From contig JAWQFM010000011.1 of NCBI GenBank assembly GCA_033442325.1, positions 1,318,201-1,382,200 of the forward strand: a stretch of DNA of 64,000 nt, read 5' to 3'. Below the pieces are notes generated by a model. That model was not told the DNA's origin. It ran no database searches and saw only the letters and a list, made by a program, of their open reading frames with translations. Made by a program: the position numbers and the translations under genes. Below are positions 2,043 to 52,428 of this stretch, in pieces; position 1 is the first letter of the stretch; each line of letters starts with the position of its first letter. This DNA is from Salpingoeca rosetta (lineage: Eukaryota; Protista; Choanoflagellata).

Positions 2043-2264
2043 GTGCGTGTGCGTGTGCGTGTGTGTGCGTGCGGGTATGTTCTCGTGTGTTCTTGTCGTT
2101 CATGATGATCAGCGGATCCAACCGCCGAAAATGACCAAACAAAAACAAACTTACCAACCACACACACACACACACACACACAAAAGCACACAAACACACA
2201 CAAAACTACAGCGCTGACACACCTTGCTGGCAAAGCGGCCAGTTCGCATCGTTGGCAAGGCCAT
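173..2264 (-). CDS. TCHP: Trichoplein keratin filament-binding / centriolar coiled-coil protein (5' part; gene continues past the left edge)
   Basis: Spliced exons: 2264-2223 [14 protein letters not shown]; 1963-1847 [39 protein letters not shown]; ~1714-1633 [15 protein letters not shown]; then [17 protein letters not shown]; [15 protein letters not shown]|EIRRFE; ...ELQQQMEE. These are colinear with human TCHP as recalled (MALPTL..., [70 protein letters not shown]). Confidence 0.85.
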
Positions 2265-2481
2265 CCCGTGTCACCCGCTGCTGCTTCTGTGTTGCCACTG
2301 CTTCGTGTCGTCGTGGTGGTGGTGGTGGTGTCACCGTTCATCAACCAAACAGCACACTGCAACGGCTTCGAAATTCGAATTTGCGCGTCGCCGCCAAACC
2401 AGCGAAAATTGTTTAATATCATTCACAAATCGTTCGGTCTGACAAGACGCGACAACAACGACAACCACGAAGAAGACGAAG

Positions 2482-3887
2482 ATGAGGACGAAGCAAGCGG
2501 CGCTGCTTGTGCTGGCGCTTGTTGGCGTGCTGGCTGTCGTGGGCTGCATGCAGGGGATGACTGGTGCACATGCTGCACCCGTCCGCACCGCTGTCGAGGA
2601 CACGGACACAGACAACGCTGCTGCTGCCGATGCTGCCGATGCTGCCGAGAGCACCGCCCCACCTGCAGATGATGCGCCAGTGGACGCAGACAGCGCGCAA
2701 GACACGACCGACGCTGGCACAGACAACGGCGCAGCCAAGCCTGTTCCCGTGAGCAAGGATGAGCCCTACAAGGCCTACGACCCGTACGACCCTTACGACT
2801 ACGACGACTATGACTACGGAGAGTATGAGGAGCTGTACAACGAGCAATATGACCTCTACGCCGACGAGCAGCTCGACCTGTACGTGTGCTTGGCGTTGCA
2901 CTGCCGCCAATGTAACATGGCCGCGTGGACTGCTCTAATGCACGACGATACACATTGTCCTTTCACTTGCACACCATGTTTTCGCTTGTACATACTCTTG
3001 GTTGCTTAACGGCACAAACGTGTGCGTACACACACACACGCATGCTCTTCGTACCGCCGTGTCCGCTTTCTGCCTTTTCACTCACAATCGACGTGTTGGT
3101 GTTCGTGCGCTCGTGCCATGCATGTGAAATCCCATGCAGGAAGGATGAAGAAAGCTATGTTGGCGGTGATGAGGATGACGACGCAGACCCAGATGTCATG
3201 TCCGTGCGCAAGGAAGCTGCCGAGAAGCGCAGAAAGGGTCCGTGCTCTTGTTGTGTGACACACCCGCTCGCGCTGGCGCGTGCGCGCACACACACACACA
3301 CAACACGCAACACACAACACACAACACACAACACACACATGCACAGAGCATTTGGTTGTGCTTGAATCTTGTGCTCGCCCACGTACTCTTGAGCTTGCAC
3401 CTCACCACCTCCTCACAGTCAACCAACGCTTTGCGTCCGCTTCCCTGGCTCTGCATGACACACCACCAACCTCCATCGTGGGCAGCCGATGAGGAAGAGT
3501 ATCAGCGGTATCTTGACGAGATGATGGAGGAGATGGCGCGTGACTCAGACCTCCGTGAAGACCTCATTGAAGACATTCAGGGGGTGCAGGAGGCCGAGCG
3601 GGCGCCCGGCGATAAGGACATTCTCAAGATTGCCCTTCGCCTCAAGAACGAGGAGCGCGTGCGGAACATCATCGAGGAGAAGGTTCGTTTTCATGCTTCG
3701 GGCGTGGCGGTGGTGATGATGATGATGATGCATGTATGTAAGTGTGTGTATGTGTGTGTGTGTGTGTGCGTGTGTGTGTGTGTGTGTGAGAGAAAGAAGA
3801 GTTGACAGAAGTGAATAACCGGAGGAGAACGTGTCACACATTCGCTATTCTCGCTTTTCATGTACCATTCCGTGTGTTCGCTTGGTG

Positions 3888-3943
<56 letters not shown>

Positions 3944-4694
3944 AGGAGCGGCAGTTGCTTGAGGCGCAGCGCCACGAAGCGCGACGGCGGGCAGAGGCGC
4001 GGATGCATGTTCCGCGGCCGCATGATGCAATGCCAGAAGGCGGAGAGGTGAGAACACATGGTCTGTTTTGCTTTCGTGCATGCGTGCATGTGTGTGTGTG
4101 TGTGTGTTTGTACACTCGCGTGCACATTGCATTGCGTGTGTGTAGCACGCCAGTCCACCCTCACCACTGCTTCCGATCACGACCTCGCCCACGTGCACAG
4201 GAGGAAGACGAGGATCTGTTTCTTGACCCCGAGGCCGCGTTTGACAAACTTACCGAGATTGTCAAACGCAGGGCCGCTGTTCTCGGCGAAATCGACACGA
4301 AGCGCCGTGCAGCATTCTTGCAGAAGGAGGTGCGCTGTTGTCCGTGTGTGCGTTGTCGTGTGTGTGTGTGTGTGTGCGTGTGTGTGTGTGTGTGTGCGTC
4401 TATTTGTGTGCGTGCGTGCGTGTGTGTGTGGGGGGTCTATTTGTGTGTGTGTGTGTGTGTGTGTTTGTGACACACGCGTGTGTTGACTCCATATCCACGC
4501 CTCCCCCTTGGTTTCACGTGTGCGTATGTGCAGATGATGCGCGAGTTGGAGTTTCGGCGCTCCGTTGCGCACGAGAAAGATCCCGAGAAGAAGAAGCAGC
4601 TCATCAAGAGCCACAAGCAAAAGATCGTGCGTTACGTGTTACTTTGTGCACTCACCGTGTGCGTGTGTGTATGTGTATGTGTGCGCGTTGTGTG

Positions 4695-4773
<79 letters not shown>

Positions 4774-4950
4774 GTGTGTGCGCGCGTGATGTGTGTGTGT
4801 GTGTGTGTGTGTGTGCGAGCGTGAGTTGAGTCTGTTTGTTTTGCCGCTCTCACCCTTCTTTGCTTTCCATTCCTTGCCGTGGGTCCATCCTTTGCTGCTT
4901 CAGGCCCAACTCAAGTCGCGAACAGCCAATCTGCCGGTTTGTCCACACAG

Positions 4951-4984
<34 letters not shown>

Positions 4985-6364
4985 ACACACACACACAATG
5001 GCGTTAACCAATGCCTGTGACCTGTCATGACCTGCTTCTTACATTGGCATGTATATGTTGTGCGCGTGTGTGTTTGCAGGGTCACGCCAAGCAGCTGAAT
5101 GAGGTGTGGGAGAAGCAGGACGGCATGCAGTCGAAGTTCAACCCAAAGGTGTGAGATGCGAAATCGTGTTGTGTCACGGGAGGGAGAGGCGTGCGCACGT
5201 GTATTTGAAGCAGGCCATGCTGTTTTGTGTGGAGACAATACAAGTTGCCATCACACCCACATTACGCAGCCCACATGACATTCCCACACCCCATATGACA
5301 TTGTGCGTCTCACCCCACTGTGTGTGTGTGTGTGTATGTGTACAGGTGTTCTTTTCGCTGCACGACATCAACGGCGACGATTTCTGGGACCACAAGGAGC
5401 TGGAGGCCATCTTCCACCGCTCAGCCGTCAAGCTGCACACCATGTACGTTTGTGTATGAGAGAGAGTGTGTGTGTGTGTGCATGTGTGCACATGCTAGTT
5501 TGTCTTGTTCGCATCTGCACACAGCCACTTCAAGCTCTCCCTCAAACCATGGCTTTATCAACACTGCACCACCACCACCACCATTCCTCCACCACCGCAC
5601 CACTACCGCTGCGGCAGCGACGGGGAGACGGATACGGATGCCGTTGAAGAGGAGATGCTCGACATGCGCGCTTGGGTCATGAAGGAGGTCGACACAGACA
5701 AGGTCTGTTGAATGTATTCGTGTGTACACGTGTGTGCATGTGGACGTGTGTTTGTACGTGGACGCGTGTGTTGACACCATGTCGCGGGCCACTTGGTTGC
5801 TGTTTCTTTGCGTGGACCATCTCTACCTCTGCTGCTCACACAACCACTACCACCACCATCATCCATCCATCCATCCATCCATGCGTTCGTCATCAGGATC
5901 AGCTTGTGTCACGTGACGAGTTCATCACATTTGCAAACTCGCCCGAGTTCCAGACCAACCGTGACTGGAAGGCCGTCTTCGTGAGTCCATCGCACATGTG
6001 CACGTGTCGATGCCGGCTGCTGTTGTTCACATGCACACACATGTACACACACACACATGCATACACACACACATGCATACACATGCACACACATGCACTG
6101 CGTGCTCATGGCAAGCCCCTGTCACACATGTGCCCACATGTACTGCTGCCTGTCCCCCTCTCTCCAATATGCCATGACTGCTGCAGCCGGACTTCAACGG
6201 CACGGAGCTGAAGGAGTTCAAGGACCGCGCGAGAAAGGCAGGCGACCCGCGCCAGGAACACGTCCAAGCACGCGTACGCGACCCCCTGTTGTGCGTGTGT
6301 GTGTGTGTGTGAGTGAGTGAGTGTGTGAGTGTGTGTGTGTGTGTGTGTGCGTGTGTGTGTGTGT

Positions 6365-31265: not shown

Positions 31266-33103
31266 GTCGCAGTTGAACAAGATCCGTGACAGCGCTAGCT
31301 TGCTAGCGAGCGAGCAAGTCCGACAAGTCCAACAAGTCAAACAAGTCGCTCGCTGGTTGCTCGAAGTTGTGGTGCTGCTGGTGTTGTGTCGTTGATGGTT
31401 GTTTGGTTGGTGGTCGTTAGCCGAATGTAACCGATACGGACGATTCACCGTTTTGCCCGTGACTTTTCTACTGTGGTAAATTCAAGTCAATCCTGTTTAG
31501 TGCCAATTTCAAGGGGCGAAATTCGGTGCACCGATTGTCGCCTCAACGCGCGTTCGTTGCGAACACAAGCTGAAGCCACATCCACGAACGACGATAGCGG
31601 TTATGACGCGCCGACGCGTGCGCAGCGGCACGAGCAACAGCAGCAGCAGCAGCAGCAATCGGAGGCGAGGGAGGAGCGGAAGCCGCAGCACCAGCAATGC
31701 TGTCGGTGTTGCTGCTGGTGCTATCAGCAGCAACGGCGGCGGCGGTGGCGGCGACACAAAGAGTAAACGGGCGTCGAGGTCTGCCAGTCGAAACAGAGGC
31801 GCAGCCACCACTGCTGACACATCACAACACACAGCAACACCAGCAACAAGCACACGCGCAACAACGGCAAGCACAGCACACGCAGAGGCGCGAGGCCGAA
31901 TTGGGAGCAGAAGTGCTGCAAGTCGTGTGGGCAGATCGGCGGCAGCAACAACAACAACAACAACAACAACAACAGCAACACCGCCACGCCGCGGGCTGTC
32001 CTTCTTCACCCGCCGCGCCCTGCGCAAGAAACGGTGCGTTGTCCCTGACAAAACCCACAACACACAACGCCACCCAACTTCGCCACCCTGACATGCATTC
32101 CTTTGGTGGCGTTGTTGTCGTTTTGAAAGCAAAGCAGCCGCAAACCGTTTTGCGACCACCGCCACCATTACCCAAACACAGACCAAGCCTACGAGCAAGG
32201 CTGACCTTGTTTGGTGGTGGTTGTGGTGGTTGGTGGTGACCGCGTGTGTGCTTGTGTGTTTGGTTCTGGTGGCTGACCAAATCTCCCCGTCTCCGTACTC
32301 TCTCACGCACACTGTGTTGACAACGCGCGCTCTTTGCTTTGCTTGTTCCTCCACTCGCACCACACGCGTCAATTGCGCACTTTTTCCCTCCCTTGCTTTG
32401 TTTGGGTGCTGTTTCGTTTGCTTCTGAGCCACCACCTCCTCCTCCACCTCCTCCTCTCTCCTGCACCTGCTTTGTGTTGGTTGCGACCGACCACCCTTAT
32501 TCTTCGACGTCGCCTCATCTCCACAACATCCCTCACACTTCACACGCCAACCAAACACTCACTCTCGCGGGATTATCATCGACACGGGGATTCATCTCAC
32601 CTCACCCACCGGACCTTTGATCTTGCTCGCCGTGTTGGCTCCGTGTGACTTGACTTGACTTAACTTGACTTGACCGACTGTGGCTGACCGACTGACTGCT
32701 CTTCCACCTCATAGGTGAGTGAGTGTGTATGTGTATGTGTGTGTGTGTGTTGTGATGCGGTTTGTTGGTGTTGGAGGAGCGGAGGGGGGTGCAGAAGGGC
32801 GTCGGGGAGAGGCGGGAAGCGAAGGCTGTGGTGGTTTCGTGGTCTTTCTCCCGTCCCGAACGAGCCACGCACGCAAGGCGGCAAACCACTTGCACCCCAC
32901 AGACACATTCATTGGTAGCGCGCATGTGCACACACTCACACACACACTCACACTCACGCACACACACGCATACATACATACACATACACATACACATACA
33001 CATACACGCACGCATACACATACATTAACACGCACACGCACGGATACATACACATACACATACACATACATTCACACACGCACGCCCCAACAGGAAAGCA
33101 ATT

Positions 33104-33296
33104 ATGCAGGCCGGGATCAACGCGCACGCGAGCGCCGACGAAAGCGAAAACCGCTTCCACACAGAAGCATCGTCAGGCACCAGCAAGCAGACTGACCAGC
33201 TGCCAACATTTCTTGATATGCAGCTTCCCCAACAGGGGCAGCAACACCACCACCAACAACAACAACAACAACACACAGAGAACCACCACCAACAGC

Positions 33297-33375
<79 letters not shown>

Positions 33376-33382
33376 GCAGCAG

Positions 33383-33423
<41 letters not shown>

Positions 33424-33652
33424 CTCAGATCAGCAGCAACAACAGCAGTCGCTGCCCACACTTTCACACGAGGCATTCTCCAATGCACTCACAGACACAG
33501 ACGTACGTCCATGATACTGGATGCTGCTTGATCTGCGCTTCCTTTGTTGAATGCGATTTTGTCGTGCTGTGTATGTGTGTGTGTGTGGGTGTGTGTGTTG
33601 AGGTTGTTGTTGCTTGTTGTTCTCTTCACGTCCCATCCTGTCTCACGTAGCG

Positions 33653-33707
<55 letters not shown>

Positions 33708-35960
33708 GATCTCATCTGTTTATCTGTTTCATCGATACAACACCAACACCCCACTTCCCTCCCCAACACTTGCAACCCACACGCGTGTGCAGACGGCCGA
33801 GTTTGAGATGGCAACTGCGCCGTCGCAGCCACGCCCGCAGTCTCCAAAGCGGCCCACACTCAAGATCCGCTCCCGCTCCAACTCCCCCAGCCCGCGCGCC
33901 GTCCCATATGCAGACGTGCACGCGCACAGGAGACGTGCCCACTCGTCCTCGCTCGCCAACAGCACATCTGCTGGCAGCGCACGCAAGCCGCCGAACAAGG
34001 AGTTCCGCCAGCGATGCTACACGACGCCAGACAACGCGTACGTCCAGCACGTTAATGTGCAATTGTGTATGTGTCTGTCTGTCTGTCTGTCTGTGTGTCT
34101 GTGCGTCTGTGTGTCTGTGTGTGTCTGTGTGTGTGTGTCTGCGAGCAACTGCATGCACAGTTGCAGCGCGACAAGTCCGCACCCATGTGACATCTGCCTT
34201 CAACAGTGCCCTCACACCTACATCACTGCCGCGTTTTGTTCCATCCACCCCCCCCCCCTTTTCCTTCCCCCTCTGTACAACAACAGCAACCTGCCTGACT
34301 ATGCAGCCAAACCAGTGCTCCGCTCGCCTTACGATGACAACGAGTTGATGCCACCGCCGCCGCCGCCGCAGCCACAGAATGTGCGCTATGTTGTCAACAC
34401 GAAGATTGAGGATGATCTCGCAAAACTCTTCAACGTCGCCCTTGGCGGCCTGGCCGCACCCACATCCCGTGAGTGTTGTTTTGGTCGCGCATTGCGTCAA
34501 ATTGTGTCTGCCTGTGTGTGTGGGTGTGTGTGTCTGTGTGGGTGTGGGTTTGTCTCTGCGTGTCTGTGTGTGGATGTCTGTGTTTGTCTCTGTGTGTCTG
34601 TGTTTGTCTCTGTGTTTGTCCGTGTGTGAGTCTGTTTGTGTCTGTGTGTGTGTGTGTGTGTCTGTCTGTCTGTCTGTATTTGTTCTTGTGTGTCTGTGTG
34701 TCTGCTTTTGAGAGGGAGGGGTAGGTCTCCAGGTACGTGATAGCATCCATATTCACCGTGTCCACCCCCTTCACCATCGTCACCAACCACATCAGAACCG
34801 CCACTGCGCAACCGCGATCTCCCCGATTCCTTTTGGAACCCGGCCAGCAAATCGGTTCGTGGCAGCGCCGTCTTGGTGTTCTCAAGTGATGGGATGACCA
34901 AGTCGATCACTGCAACAACTCGCATGTACTTGCACACAATCGCAAACACGCACACGCACACGCACACGCACACGCACACAATCGCATACACATACACACA
35001 AGAACCCCTCACTCCCCACCTCACCAAAACCTCCTTTCACGTTGCAGATGGTGGCCACGCTCGGCGAGCAGCTGATGCAGCCCAACAGCAGCAGCAGCAG
35101 TAGCAGCGCTGCGCCCGCAACATCAAACCTGGGACGCACCGTGTACACCCCCGAGAAGGGTGTGGTGGTGACATCGCAGTCTGTGTCGGCGTCACCGCAG
35201 CAGTACTCGCGCAGCAACACCATCTCCACGGCCTCCCCCGCTGGCGCGCGCTATGTCAGCAGCAGCAGCAGCAGCAGCAACAGCATGCAGGGGGTGCGGC
35301 AGTTTCCTCACCGCCATAACAGCGCCAGCCACCACCATAGCCATCAGCATCAGCAGCACCGCGCGTCGTCATCGAGTGTGCATGCCACGCCGGTGCGTTC
35401 CGCGACACAGCCTGCGAGCTCCCTGGCCAACTTCCGGAGCGGCAGCTTTGGTGGCCCCAGCTCATCGTCCGTCAAGCAGTCGCTGTTCCAGCCCATGTCC
35501 ACCTCCGCCAGCACATCCGTTGCCACCAGCACATACAACACGGCCACGACGGTGTCCAGTGCACAGGCCACGCGCGCCTTCACCTCCACCATCCCGGCGT
35601 CTTCGTCGTCCACGTCGTTCCAGCCGGCCGACGACCACACTGTCAGCAGCACCGTCACATGCACGTCAACCGCCCTCCCCACGGCAGGGCACGGCCAGAA
35701 CCAGCGCACGCACGCGCTCAACGCAAGCCCAGAGAGCATGCAGAAGCACGAACTCAACACGGCGTTTGTTCGCCCGTTTGACAAGAGCGCGCACCACACA
35801 GCGGACGCCCCACGCGAGGCAGACATCACACCCCCGGATATGCAGCTTCTGCATGACACGAGCGACCCTTTCGCTCTCACTGCCGGCCGCTCCAACACGC
35901 ACTCGCCCTTCACTCTCCCAGACTTTACCGGCATGAACGGCTCCCCCAACAACTCAGACG

Positions 35961-36021
<61 letters not shown>

Positions 36022-36681
36022 TGGGTGTGGGTGTGGGTGTGGGTGTCTTGTGTTAGTGTCTTTTGTTAGTGTCTTTTGTTAGTGTCTTTTGTTCGTATCT
36101 TGTGTCTTGTGTGTGTGTGTGTGTGTGTGCTCGTGTTGTGGCGTTTGGTTACGTGTGTGTGCGTACATGGCAGACCAAACGTGCACTGCGCTGCGTTGTT
36201 AAATATGCGCGCAGTTGCACTGTTTCAGGCCTGGCTTCCTTCCCACGCTTTTCTTCTGGTGCCCTGTGTATCCAACTCTTGCACGGCCTCACACACACCA
36301 TCCACCCACCATGGTTACATCCACTCGCATGCGCCACGGGGTATCCAGCTCCCTGCCTTGCCTGATTTCACGGGCTCCTTCGAGGGCACGGACGACGGCA
36401 TGGATCTGTTTGGCAACGTGGGCGACCTCATTGACGCAGAGCTCACGCTCCTCGGAATGCCGGACGCGAACCCGGGCCTGTTTGAGGACTTTGCTCGCCC
36501 GTTTGCACAGCACAGCGACAGCCAGCAACAATCACACCAGCAGCACCAACAACAGCAGCAACAGTCGCAACAGCAATCACAACAACAGCAGCAGCAGCAG
36601 CAGCCGCGTCGTGCGTCGTCAACGCAGCACATGCATCATTATCAGCGCCACTTCAACGTGCAGCACACAACAACCCTGTAG
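33104..36681 (+). CDS. YAP/Yorkie-like TEAD-binding-domain protein without WW domains (~710 aa, polyQ and Ser/Thr-rich)
   Basis: Six exons with consistent phases: 33104-33502, 33793-34037, 34287-34468, 34796-34854, 35048-35962, 36349-36681 (2133 nt). Exons 3-4 encode [45 protein letters not shown]; YAP has [22 protein letters not shown]...VPMRLRKLPDSFFKPP. A likely 5'UTR intron spans 32715-33093. Confidence 0.8.
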
Positions 36682-37310
36682 AGATGGGTCGCCATCCCGC
36701 TTTCACTCACCACACGAGGCCAAAGCGTTTGCGTTGCGGTCCTCTGTTGCGGTGCCTTTTGTTGTGTGTCTTGTGCCGGTGTCGGGTTTGGTGTTGTTCT
36801 TTACAGTTCCGTTGGCGGCCCGACAAGAACAGGGTCTATGTGTGCACACACACACACACACACACGCAAACACACACACACGCAAACAGACAGTCACGTT
36901 CACACACACACACACACTATAGCACATGGACGCAGTGCAGTGCTGTGCGTGTGATGCTGTTGTTTGATGTTGACAGGTGCACGCTGCTTGACTTTGTCGT
37001 GCTTGTGGCTGCGCTCATCATCCATCACCTGACTTCGTTTTCACTTCTTTCCACCTTTTTCTTTTCCCTCCTTCTTCTTTTGTTTGCCTTTTCGTTGTTG
37101 TTTGAAGCATTCATTGACTTGTTTACAACACATCGCTCGCCCTCACTTGAGTTTGTTTGCCCCCCCCCCCCTTACATCTTCGTGTCGCAGTTGGTTCTGT
37201 CTCCTCGCACTGTTTGTCACCTTCGGTCAACTCACTCACCCATTTCACCAGCGTTGAAGAAAGTTTGCATTGTTACCCATTAAACTTCACGAACAACAAG
37301 CAGCAAGACG

Positions 37311-40296
<2,986 letters not shown>

Positions 40297-52116: not shown

Positions 52117-52428
52117 GATGCACGTGCAGGACTATCCTTGGGAGCATGCGGTGGACGATGTGTCTGGTGAAACATACTACATCAACACGCAAACAAGCGA
52201 AACGTCGTGGGAACCGCCGGAGGACTGGGAAGAGGTGGGTGTGTCTGTGTGTGTGTATGTGTGTGGGTGTGTGCCCGCTCGTTTGTGATCACTCAATTGT
52301 CCCTGCAACTGCATGTATCTCACACATAACCCCTCTGTCCCCACCCCCTCTCGCCTCTACCCGCCATGCCTGCCACCCCACAGTTTGTTGCGTTCCACAA
52401 CGGGAATCCCCCCACGTCCTTTGCATGA
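50153..52428 (+). CDS. CYBA: Cytochrome b-245 light chain (p22phox, NADPH oxidase subunit) with an extra C-terminal WW domain
   Basis: IAWSMWAN, LLLGGI, FEWPRSKRKKGYTMPREYQ, NYFARFVLHL, YLVAAIKGESWVP and APTKAPPRRP match human p22phox (IEWAMWAN, LEYPRGKRKKGSTMERWGQ, NYYVRAVLHL, YLLAAVRGEQWTP, PPSNPPPRPP). Exon 52130-52234 encodes PWEHAVDDVSGETYYINTQTSETSWEPP. The final exon 52384-52428 is inferred. Confidence 0.93.

What the first reader, a model, noticed from the sequence alone, without database searches (positions are those of the whole stretch)
33104..36681. Hidden YAP/Yorkie-type TEAD-binding protein with no WW domain
Seen: a 59-nt exon (34796-34854), not translated in this frame by the ORF track, splices in phase to the previous exon. 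The join reads [23 protein letters not shown]...[16 protein letters not shown]. The 710-aa model contains only one Trp, so it has no WW domain. Known: YAP/TAZ/Yki bind TEAD through a beta-strand, an LxxLF helix (DLEALF) and an Omega-loop (PMRLRKLPDSFF), and use WW domains to bind PPxY partners. FAM181A/B carry a similar Omega-loop (e.g. LPASFW) without WW domains. Inference: this is a second, WW-independent TEAD/Scalloped cofactor in a probable unicellular relative of animals. It has all three YAP TBD elements, a FAM181A-like FW ending, polyQ tracts and an acidic-hydrophobic putative activation segment ([21 protein letters not shown]). It could be an alternative coactivator or a competitor of canonical Yorkie. 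I cannot exclude that it is the annotated Yorkie itself.
Basis: partly seen in the sequence, partly recalled or inferred. Interest (0 to 1): 0.88.

Follow-up and report, generated by a model that had tools for sequence, protein, structure and literature searches.

The report
Choanoflagellate YAP-like TEAD-binding protein without WW
This Salpingoeca rosetta gene encodes a long disordered protein with a complete YAP/Yorkie-type TEAD-binding motif and no WW domain; it is separate from the published "Yorkie" gene, but a 2020 paper already reported this same protein and feature, and its function is still untested.

Summary
The spliced protein reads [19 protein letters not shown]...[16 protein letters not shown].

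- **Species.** The genome is Salpingoeca rosetta. All published yorkie (PTSG_06057) CRISPR reagents match exactly, but on contig C15. This window lies on C11, so the gene is not the annotated Yorkie.
- **The two genes.** PTSG_06057 has two WW domains and no TEAD-binding domain (TBD). This gene has the TBD, one Trp and no WW.
- **Specificity of the TBD match.** The nine best Protein Data Bank (PDB) hits are all YAP TBD chains. The exon is the best Omega-loop hit in the 55-Mb genome. Smith-Waterman against human YAP beats 5000 of 5000 shuffles.
- **Not hidden or new.** Mesrouze et al. 2020 (PMC7784741) reported S. rosetta XP_004994687.1 (TBD residues 402-439, no WW) and a Monosiga counterpart. 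Adding an upstream exon (31603-32033) gives 857 aa and places the TBD at exactly 402-439, so this is almost certainly that protein.
- **Still open.** TEAD binding is untested; the complex prediction gave no verdict. No HxRxxS Warts site is present.
- **Unexploited lead.** The S. rosetta "yorkie" knockout, which had no phenotype, targeted the TBD-less gene.

The parts
31603..32033 (+). Probable first coding exon (143 codons + 2 nt), basic and Ser/Thr/Arg-rich, with donor GTGCGT at 32034. It is inferred, not seen spliced.
   Evidence: Open frame from the ATG. Joining it to 33094 keeps the frame and adds 147 residues, which places the TBD at residues 402-439, exactly as published for XP_004994687.1. 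The stretch is held by the same RNA runs. The joint 32033/33094 is not listed.
33094..33502 (+).
   Evidence: Joint 33502/33793 in X4, X6 and X5. Acceptor ...ccccaacag|G at 33093/33094. X6 contig 13 starts at 33093.
33793..34037 (+). Exon with a basic Ser/Pro-rich segment, including RSRSNSPSP and RRRAHSSS (residues 326-333 of the 857-aa model).
   Evidence: Joints 33502/33793 and 34037/34287 in three studies. Motif scan.
34287..34468 (+). Exon with LPDY, a polyPro run and the N-terminal half of the TBD. The putative beta-strand VRYVVNTK starts at 34381. The alpha1 helix [12 protein letters not shown] is at 34408-34443. The linker follows.
   Evidence: This exon has no paralogue in the genome.
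34796..34854 (+). The 59-nt exon encoding the Omega-loop (Q)[19 protein letters not shown]. The Omega-loop core is at 34798-34842.
   Evidence: Joints 34468/34796 and 34854/35048 in X4, X6 and X5. Pfam TEADIR3 gives 21.3 bits, E 3e-4. It is the best TEADIR3 hit in the whole genome, at C11:1353001-1353042 = window 34801-34842.
35048..35962 (+). Long Ser/Thr-rich, probably disordered exon (305 aa).
   Evidence: RNA contigs cover 35047-35249 and 35291-35954. No Pfam family. No homologue among 1.84 billion representatives.
36349..36681 (+). Last exon. It has an acidic-hydrophobic, activation-domain-like segment [38 protein letters not shown] (36391-36504), a polyQ tract, and the C-terminus ...HTTTL followed by the stop.
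   Evidence: Contigs X5 record 9 and X6 record 15 bridge 35954->36347 with 6 unplaced letters, which fits 35962/36349. Translation.

Best explanation
This is the S. rosetta gene annotated as XP_004994687.1. It encodes a mostly disordered nuclear-cofactor-like protein of about 857 aa (710 aa if translation starts at 33104). Its only recognisable module is a complete YAP/Yorkie-type TEAD-binding domain.

The domain consists of a short strand, an LxxLF helix (LAKLF), a 13-residue linker and an Omega-loop ([13 protein letters not shown]). Most likely this domain docks onto the YAP-binding domain of the single S. rosetta TEAD/Scalloped protein, at the same helix and Omega-loop interfaces (2 and 3) that YAP uses. 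The C-terminal acidic-hydrophobic segment and the polyQ tracts would then recruit the transcription machinery, making the protein a WW-independent TEAD coactivator.

The gene model, the motif, its specificity and its separateness from PTSG_06057 are shown here. TEAD binding, activation and any control by Warts are inferred.

The likely evolutionary origin is a YAP/Yorkie ancestor carrying both a TBD and WW domains, as Capsaspora Yki still does. In choanoflagellates its two modules ended up on separate genes, either by fission or by duplication followed by complementary loss.
For: - **Gene model.** It is confirmed by spliced RNA contigs from three studies.
- **PDB search.** A phmmer search of the 61-aa TBD against 177,635 PDB sequences returns nine YAP TBD chains from TEAD complexes as the top nine hits, with E from 1e-3 to 2e-2. 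Each alignment spans the helix through the Omega-loop with one 1-residue gap. Vestigial and FAM181A Omega-loops come next.
- **Hot-spot residues.** Using the residues named by Mesrouze 2020: L65, L68, F69, R87, R89, L91, P92, S94 and F95 are identical. M86 is Leu and F96 is Trp, and the paper describes both substitutions as occurring in natural YAPs (FAM181A also has Trp at position 96).
- **Pfam and genome scan.** Pfam TEADIR3 is the only family hit for the TBD peptide (E 3e-4). In a six-frame scan of the 55-Mb genome this exon is the top hit at 22 bits; the next hits score 15 bits.
- **Shuffle test.** Smith-Waterman against the human YAP TBD scores 70, and 0 of 5000 shuffles reach it (maximum 51). 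Against the Trichoplax TBD, 0 of 5000 shuffles reach the observed score; against Capsaspora, 2 of 5000 do.
- **TEAD partner.** S. rosetta has one TEAD gene, with TEA and YBD domains. Its YBD aligns to human TEAD1-4 and to Scalloped at E 1e-17.
- **Published precedent.** Mesrouze 2020 independently found the same S. rosetta protein and a Monosiga counterpart.
Against: - No binding data exist.
- The complex prediction gave no verdict.
- The Pfam TEADIR3 score is below the curated cut-off (21.3 versus 26 bits).
- The motif is short, and the rest of the protein is low-complexity with no detectable homologues.
- There is no HxRxxS Warts/LATS consensus and no WW domain to dock PPxY partners, so a link to Hippo signalling is not evident.
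- The isolated Capsaspora Omega-loop peptide bound human TEAD only weakly, with IC50 of about 110 uM.
- I could not retrieve orthologues myself, so conservation of the TBD rests on the published Monosiga hit.
Confidence: 0.68

Rival explanations
1. The protein binds TEAD through the same TBD but acts as a competitor or repressor of another coactivator, in the manner of Vgll4, rather than as an activator.
For: The TBD evidence is the same as for the main explanation. The protein lacks the WW and coiled-coil modules through which YAP recruits many partners.
Against: No other YAP-type or Tondu-type TEAD cofactor was found in the genome for it to compete with. There is no second TEADIR3 hit and no Vg_Tdu hit, and PTSG_06057 has no TBD. 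The C-terminal acidic-hydrophobic segment and the polyQ tracts look like activation regions, although this is only a compositional argument.
Confidence: 0.15
2. The TBD-like stretch is a chance or convergent short linear motif in a fast-evolving polyQ/Ser-rich protein that has nothing to do with TEAD.
For: The match is below Pfam's gathering score. PDB E-values are only about 1e-3. The rest of the protein has no homologues.
Against: Two separate elements, LxxLF and the Omega-loop, occur in the right order with YAP-like spacing, and every hot-spot residue is kept. The hit is unique in the genome. No shuffle of 5000 reaches the observed score. A Monosiga counterpart has been reported.
Confidence: 0.12
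3. It is simply the already described S. rosetta Yorkie (PTSG_06057), either with missed WW exons or seen at a second locus.
Against: The published yorkie crRNA, both 50-nt homology arms and both genotyping primers match contig C15 exactly and give the published 357-bp product. This window is on C11. RNA contigs show no extra exons. The only WW hit in the window is at 52136-52219, in another gene about 15 kb downstream.
Confidence: 0.01

Closest known systems
YAP/TAZ/Yorkie TEAD-binding domain (human YAP residues 50-100; PDB 3KYS, 3JUA, 5OAQ)
   Same: An LxxLF helix, a short linker and an Omega-loop in the same order and register. L65, L68, F69, R87, R89, L91, P92, D93, S94 and F95 are identical, and M86L and F96W are tolerated variants. 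The C-terminal end ...TTL fits the same class I PDZ-binding pattern as YAP's ...TWL; the YAP ending is from my own knowledge, and this is weak evidence.
   Different: No WW domain, no HxRxxS Warts/LATS site and no PxxPhiP linker motif. The TBD sits about 400 residues from the N-terminus rather than near it. The rest of the protein is polyQ/Ser-rich and unrelated.
S. rosetta XP_004994687.1 and M. brevicollis A9UXI0 as described by Mesrouze et al. 2020 (PMC7784741)
   Same: [quoted passage not shown] The published TBD residues 402-439 coincide exactly with I402-A439 of the 857-aa model built here.
   Different: Nothing substantive; this is almost certainly the same protein. I could not fetch the accession to compare the sequences letter by letter.
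S. rosetta 'Yorkie' PTSG_06057 (contig C15), the gene knocked out by Combredet & Brunet
   Same: It is the other half of a YAP-like architecture in the same genome, and its remainder is also Q/H-rich and disordered.
   Different: It has two WW domains, no Omega-loop and no LxxLF TBD. The C-terminal regions of the two proteins show no significant similarity.
Capsaspora owczarzaki Yki (coYki)
   Same: The Omega-loop is very similar: PPLRDRNLPASFF in Capsaspora against [13 protein letters not shown] here.
   Different: Per Mesrouze 2020, coYki carries WW domains in the same protein but has no LxxLF helix. The S. rosetta protein has the helix but no WW.
FAM181A/B and PERCC1 (Pfam TEADIR3)
   Same: WW-less proteins that use an Omega-loop to bind TEAD. 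FAM181A also has Trp at the position of YAP F96.
   Different: In FAM181B the LxxLF motif lies 54 residues from the Omega-loop. Here the helix and loop have YAP-like spacing, and the PDB search ranks YAP far above FAM181A (E 1e-3 versus 0.33).

Membership tests
YAP/TAZ/Yorkie | Omega-loop with the conserved Pro85, Met/Leu86, Arg89, Leu91, Pro92, Ser94, Phe95 and aromatic residue at 96 | tested here: met
   [13 protein letters not shown] aligns residue for residue to YAP 85-96. The residue roles are taken from PMC7784741.
YAP/TAZ/Yorkie | LxxLF alpha-helix a short linker upstream of the Omega-loop | tested here: met
   L406-A-K-L-F410 lies 13 residues before P424, in the same alignment as the Omega-loop.
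YAP/TAZ/Yorkie | At least one WW domain (W-x21-W), the criterion used by Mesrouze 2020 to call a protein YAP | tested here: not met
   There is one Trp in 857 aa and no W-x(19-23)-W. The six-frame PF00397 scan finds no hit inside 31603-36681. RNA contigs show no extra exon.
YAP/TAZ/Yorkie | HxRxxS/T Warts/LATS phosphorylation site(s) | tested here: not met
   No H.[RK]..[ST] motif is present. Only RxRxxS sites occur, including RRRAHS331, which shares RAHSS with the human S127 site.
YAP/TAZ/Yorkie | Physical binding to the TEAD YBD | tested here: inconclusive
   Complex prediction gave no verdict. That job used the TBD as two exon pieces and a related choanoflagellate TEAD as a stand-in. A biochemical test is needed.
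Pfam PF15238 TEADIR3 (Omega-loop; FAM181/YAP) | Score at or above the gathering cut-off of 26 bits | tested here: not met
   21.3 bits, E 3e-4, profile positions 2-15 of 16; 22 bits in the genome scan.
Vestigial/Vgll (Tondu, PF07545) | Tondu motif | tested here: not met
   No hit in the protein or anywhere in the genome at E<=10.

The most novel reading that the evidence does not exclude
In choanoflagellates the ancestral Yorkie is split across two genes, and this TBD-only gene, not the WW-only PTSG_06057, is the real TEAD coactivator. That would explain two published results: the S. rosetta 'yorkie' knockout has no phenotype while the warts knockout gives giant rosettes, and Monosiga 'Yap' drives growth in flies only after a human TBD is grafted on. 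It would also mean that the complete helix-plus-Omega-loop TBD predates animals.
Probability: 0.25. Interest if true: 0.75.

Novelty: already known. Interest (0 to 1): 0.4.

Why it matters
Two papers used the WW-containing gene as the choanoflagellate Yorkie. The functional study of Monosiga Yap is Ikmi 2014. The S. rosetta yorkie knockout is the Combredet & Brunet preprint. In the library searched here, I found no paper that follows up the 2020 observation that the TEAD-binding module sits on a different gene.

If this protein is the true TEAD partner, two conclusions need revisiting: the null phenotype of the yorkie knockout, and the view that the complete TBD arose only within animals. The experiment is now easy to do with the published knockout cassette. 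The sequence observation itself is not new.

Tried and rejected
- **Complex prediction.** I used the TEAD YBD of a related choanoflagellate (P0004, about 80% identical to the S. rosetta YBD exons). The TBD went in as two unaltered exon pieces; the Omega-loop piece carried 11 non-native intron-encoded residues to reach 30 aa. The result was no verdict (score 0.00).
- **Representative-protein search.** Exon 5 gave 0 hits, not even itself.
- **Homologue searches.** There were no relevant hits. Intron-derived CVCV words swamped the first search. The second, restricted to exon 3, found nothing among proteins of 199-632 aa. S. rosetta's own proteins appear not to be served: the TEAD search also returned only other species. 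An 857-aa protein is also outside the length window. These blanks therefore say little, and I could not obtain the annotated protein or EukProt orthologues.
- **Metagenome scan with the TBD peptide.** No relatives were found.
- **Capsaspora Omega-loop peptide against the own genome.** Nothing rang, which is uninformative.
- **Weak TEADIR3 hit on C1 near a WW hit.** It looked like a second YAP-like gene, but it lies antisense to the real reading frame and is spurious.
- **Paralogy test between the C-terminal regions of this gene and PTSG_06057.** No significant similarity was found.
- **WW hit inside the window at 52136-52219.** It belongs to a separate gene about 15 kb downstream.
- **Sebe-Pedros 2012.** The paper could not be read because it is not held.
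Full report
**Observation**

The region 33104-36681 contains six exons with canonical GT..AG borders. They splice into a stop-free 2133-nt reading frame encoding 710 aa with a single Trp.

The 59-nt exon (34796-34854) joins in phase to the previous exon.

Laying public runs on 32000-37500 gave these results:
- The joints 33502/33793, 34037/34287, 34468/34796 and 34854/35048 each appear in Logan contigs from three separate studies (X4, X6, X5).
- Single contigs run from 33793 to 35249 across the small exon.
- Contigs X5 record 9 and X6 record 15 bridge exon 5 to exon 6. They leave six unplaced letters, which fits 35962/36349 exactly, because the two letters 'ag' occur on both sides of the joint.
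- No read or contig skips the 59-nt exon, and no additional exon appears.
- In the stranded raw-read run X21 the first mate lies on the - strand. By the tool's note this means + strand RNA.

**Organism, and whether this is the annotated Yorkie**

The assembly has 55.4 Mb in 68 contigs, and the window is C11:1318201-1382200.

The S. rosetta knockout paper by Combredet and Brunet (bioRxiv 10.1101/2024.07.13.603360) names Yorkie as PTSG_06057 and lists its reagents. The crRNA, both 50-nt homology arms and both genotyping primers match contig C15 exactly, and the primers span the published 357 bp. The genome is therefore S. rosetta, and the described Yorkie lies on a different contig.

At the C15 locus:
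- The N-terminal exon (MDVKNFLRHQL...) has no Pfam hit.
- Two WW domains follow, one of them split by an intron.
- The remainder is Q/H-rich and acidic.
- No Omega-loop is found there.

This agrees with two papers. Ikmi et al. 2014 (PMC4032125) found only an alpha1-like motif in Monosiga Yap. Mesrouze et al. 2020 (PMC7784741) found no TBD-like region in the Sebe-Pedros Yki sequences of S. rosetta and M. brevicollis.

**Is the TBD resemblance more than chance?**

- **PDB search.** A phmmer search of the 61-aa spliced peptide against all PDB chains returns nine YAP TBD chains from YAP-TEAD complexes as its nine best hits (E from 1e-3 to 2e-2). Each is aligned from the helix through the Omega-loop with a single one-residue gap. 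The Vestigial and FAM181A Omega-loops come next.
- **Pfam.** Pfam gives one hit, PF15238 TEADIR3 ('Omega loop, TEAD interacting region 3'), at E 3e-4 and 21.3 bits. This is below the 26-bit gathering score.
- **Genome scan.** A six-frame scan of the whole genome with that model puts this exon first at 22 bits. The next hits score 15 bits. One of those lies antisense to a real gene and is spurious.
- **Other cofactor types.** There is no Tondu (Vestigial) motif anywhere in the genome. Exon 3 has no paralogue.
- **Shuffle test.** Smith-Waterman of the human YAP TBD against the protein scores 70. None of 5000 shuffles exceeds 51. The Trichoplax and Capsaspora TBD peptides taken from Mesrouze's Table 3 behave similarly.
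- **Hot-spot residues.** Using the residue roles given by Mesrouze et al., L65, L68, F69, R87, R89, L91, P92, S94 and F95 are identical. M86 is Leu and F96 is Trp. The paper describes both as natural variants, and FAM181A also has Trp at position 96.

The putative beta-strand (VRYVVNTK) is plausible, but it lies outside the statistically aligned region.

**Prior publication**

Section 3.5 of Mesrouze et al. 2020 reports two BLAST results:
- A search with the Capsaspora Omega-loop region found one S. rosetta sequence, XP_004994687.1.
- A search with 'residues 402-439 from S. rosetta' then found M. brevicollis A9UXI0.

It has the same length (38 residues) but is offset by 147.

Splicing 32033 to the acceptor at 33093/33094 keeps the frame and adds exactly 147 residues. 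The result is an 857-aa protein in which I402-A439 is the TBD.

This numerical coincidence, together with the uniqueness of the motif in the genome, makes it almost certain that this locus is XP_004994687.1. The annotation therefore already contains the 59-nt exon.

The upstream exon is held by the same RNA runs, but the joint itself was not seen. One contig in X6 reads through the donor unspliced. The true N-terminus remains open.

No other paper in the searchable library mentions either accession or follows up the observation.

**How it most likely works**

S. rosetta has a single TEAD gene (C7:609669-612325) with TEA and YBD domains. Its YBD exons align to human TEAD1-4 and Drosophila Scalloped at about E 1e-17.

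The most economical reading is that the TBD of this protein docks on that YBD as YAP does. The rest of the protein would supply activation functions. It consists of polyQ tracts, a long Ser/Thr-rich disordered region, and the acidic-hydrophobic segment [34 protein letters not shown].

All of this is inference; nothing shows binding. A complex prediction gave no verdict and is not counted either way. It had to be run with the TBD as two exon pieces and with a related choanoflagellate TEAD as a stand-in.

Several features argue against simple Hippo control:
- There is no HxRxxS site.
- There is no WW domain to dock PPxY partners.
- Only RxRxxS sites are present. One of them, RRRAHS331-SS, shares the five residues RAHSS with the human S127 site, but it lacks the His at -5 and lies N-terminal to the TBD.

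**Evolutionary reading (inference)**

Per Mesrouze et al., Capsaspora Yki has an Omega-loop and WW domains in one protein but no LxxLF helix. S. rosetta, and reportedly Monosiga, have a full helix-plus-loop TBD on one gene and the WW domains on another.

Either the ancestral gene split, or it duplicated and each copy lost one module. I found no residual similarity between the C-terminal regions of the two S. rosetta genes.

**Why it still deserves attention**

Ikmi et al. showed that Monosiga Yap (the WW gene) drives proliferation in flies only after the human TBD is grafted on. Combredet and Brunet found no growth or rosette-size phenotype for the PTSG_06057 knockout, while the warts knockout doubles rosette size. 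Their preprint never mentions TEAD or Scalloped, and a term search for paralogs, redundancy or effectors found nothing.

A knockout of this gene, alone and in the warts background, is the obvious test.

**Verdict**

- The claim 'not the annotated Yorkie' is established.
- The 'hidden' and 'new' claims are not supported, because the protein is annotated and its TBD-without-WW architecture was published in 2020.
- The function is untested.

Noticed in passing
window 52136-52219 (+): The only WW-domain hit in the window (38 bits) is the C-terminal exon of a different gene about 15 kb downstream (...DYPWEHAVDDVSGETYYINTQTSETSWEPPEDWEE).
   Followed up: partly
window 32184-32735: This stretch, inside the putative first intron, is transcribed (contigs in X4 and X6). 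The few stranded reads have the first mate on +, hinting at a - strand transcript nested in or overlapping the intron. Too few reads to be sure.
   Followed up: no
window 32357: RNA contigs from two studies carry a 22-nt CA-rich insertion relative to the assembly. This is probably a microsatellite length difference between cultures or an assembly collapse.
   Followed up: no
window 36546 and 35083-35107 / 36538-36560: C>A at 36546 in about a third of reads, plus many 'joints' between the two CAG/CAA tracts. These are most likely cross-mapping between polyQ-coding repeats, not real variants or splicing.
   Followed up: no
window 36667-36678 (protein C-terminus ...HTTTL): The C-terminal T-T-L fits the class I PDZ-binding pattern (S/T-x-hydrophobic), like YAP's ...TWL. 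It could easily be chance in a Thr-rich protein.
   Followed up: no
window 33900-33925 (residues 326-333, RRRAHSSS) and 34296-34307 (LPDY, residue 364): RAHSS is identical to the core of the human YAP S127 site, but Arg replaces His at -5 and there is no Pro at +2. A single LPxY motif about 30 residues upstream of the TBD could in principle be a WW ligand, for example for the WW-only 'Yorkie'. Both points are speculative.
   Followed up: no
L037 (G000:C15:1243000-1252999), minus strand, about 2100-6270: The published S. rosetta yorkie (PTSG_06057) has its first WW domain split by an intron, so the six-frame Pfam scan sees only one full WW. Its N-terminal exon has H-A-R-V-L-P-S, with the Ser one position off the HxRxxS consensus.
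   Followed up: partly
window 37311-37931 (+): The next gene downstream starts with a signal-peptide-like N-terminus and looks like an alpha-galactosidase-type glycosidase (…GWNSYDSFG…DEGWF…). This is judged by eye only.
   Followed up: no
protein databases: Neither this protein nor S. rosetta TEAD was returned by the large protein searches, although close choanoflagellate TEADs from EukProt were. S. rosetta's own proteins seem not to be served, so blanks for this genome are uninformative.
   Followed up: partly
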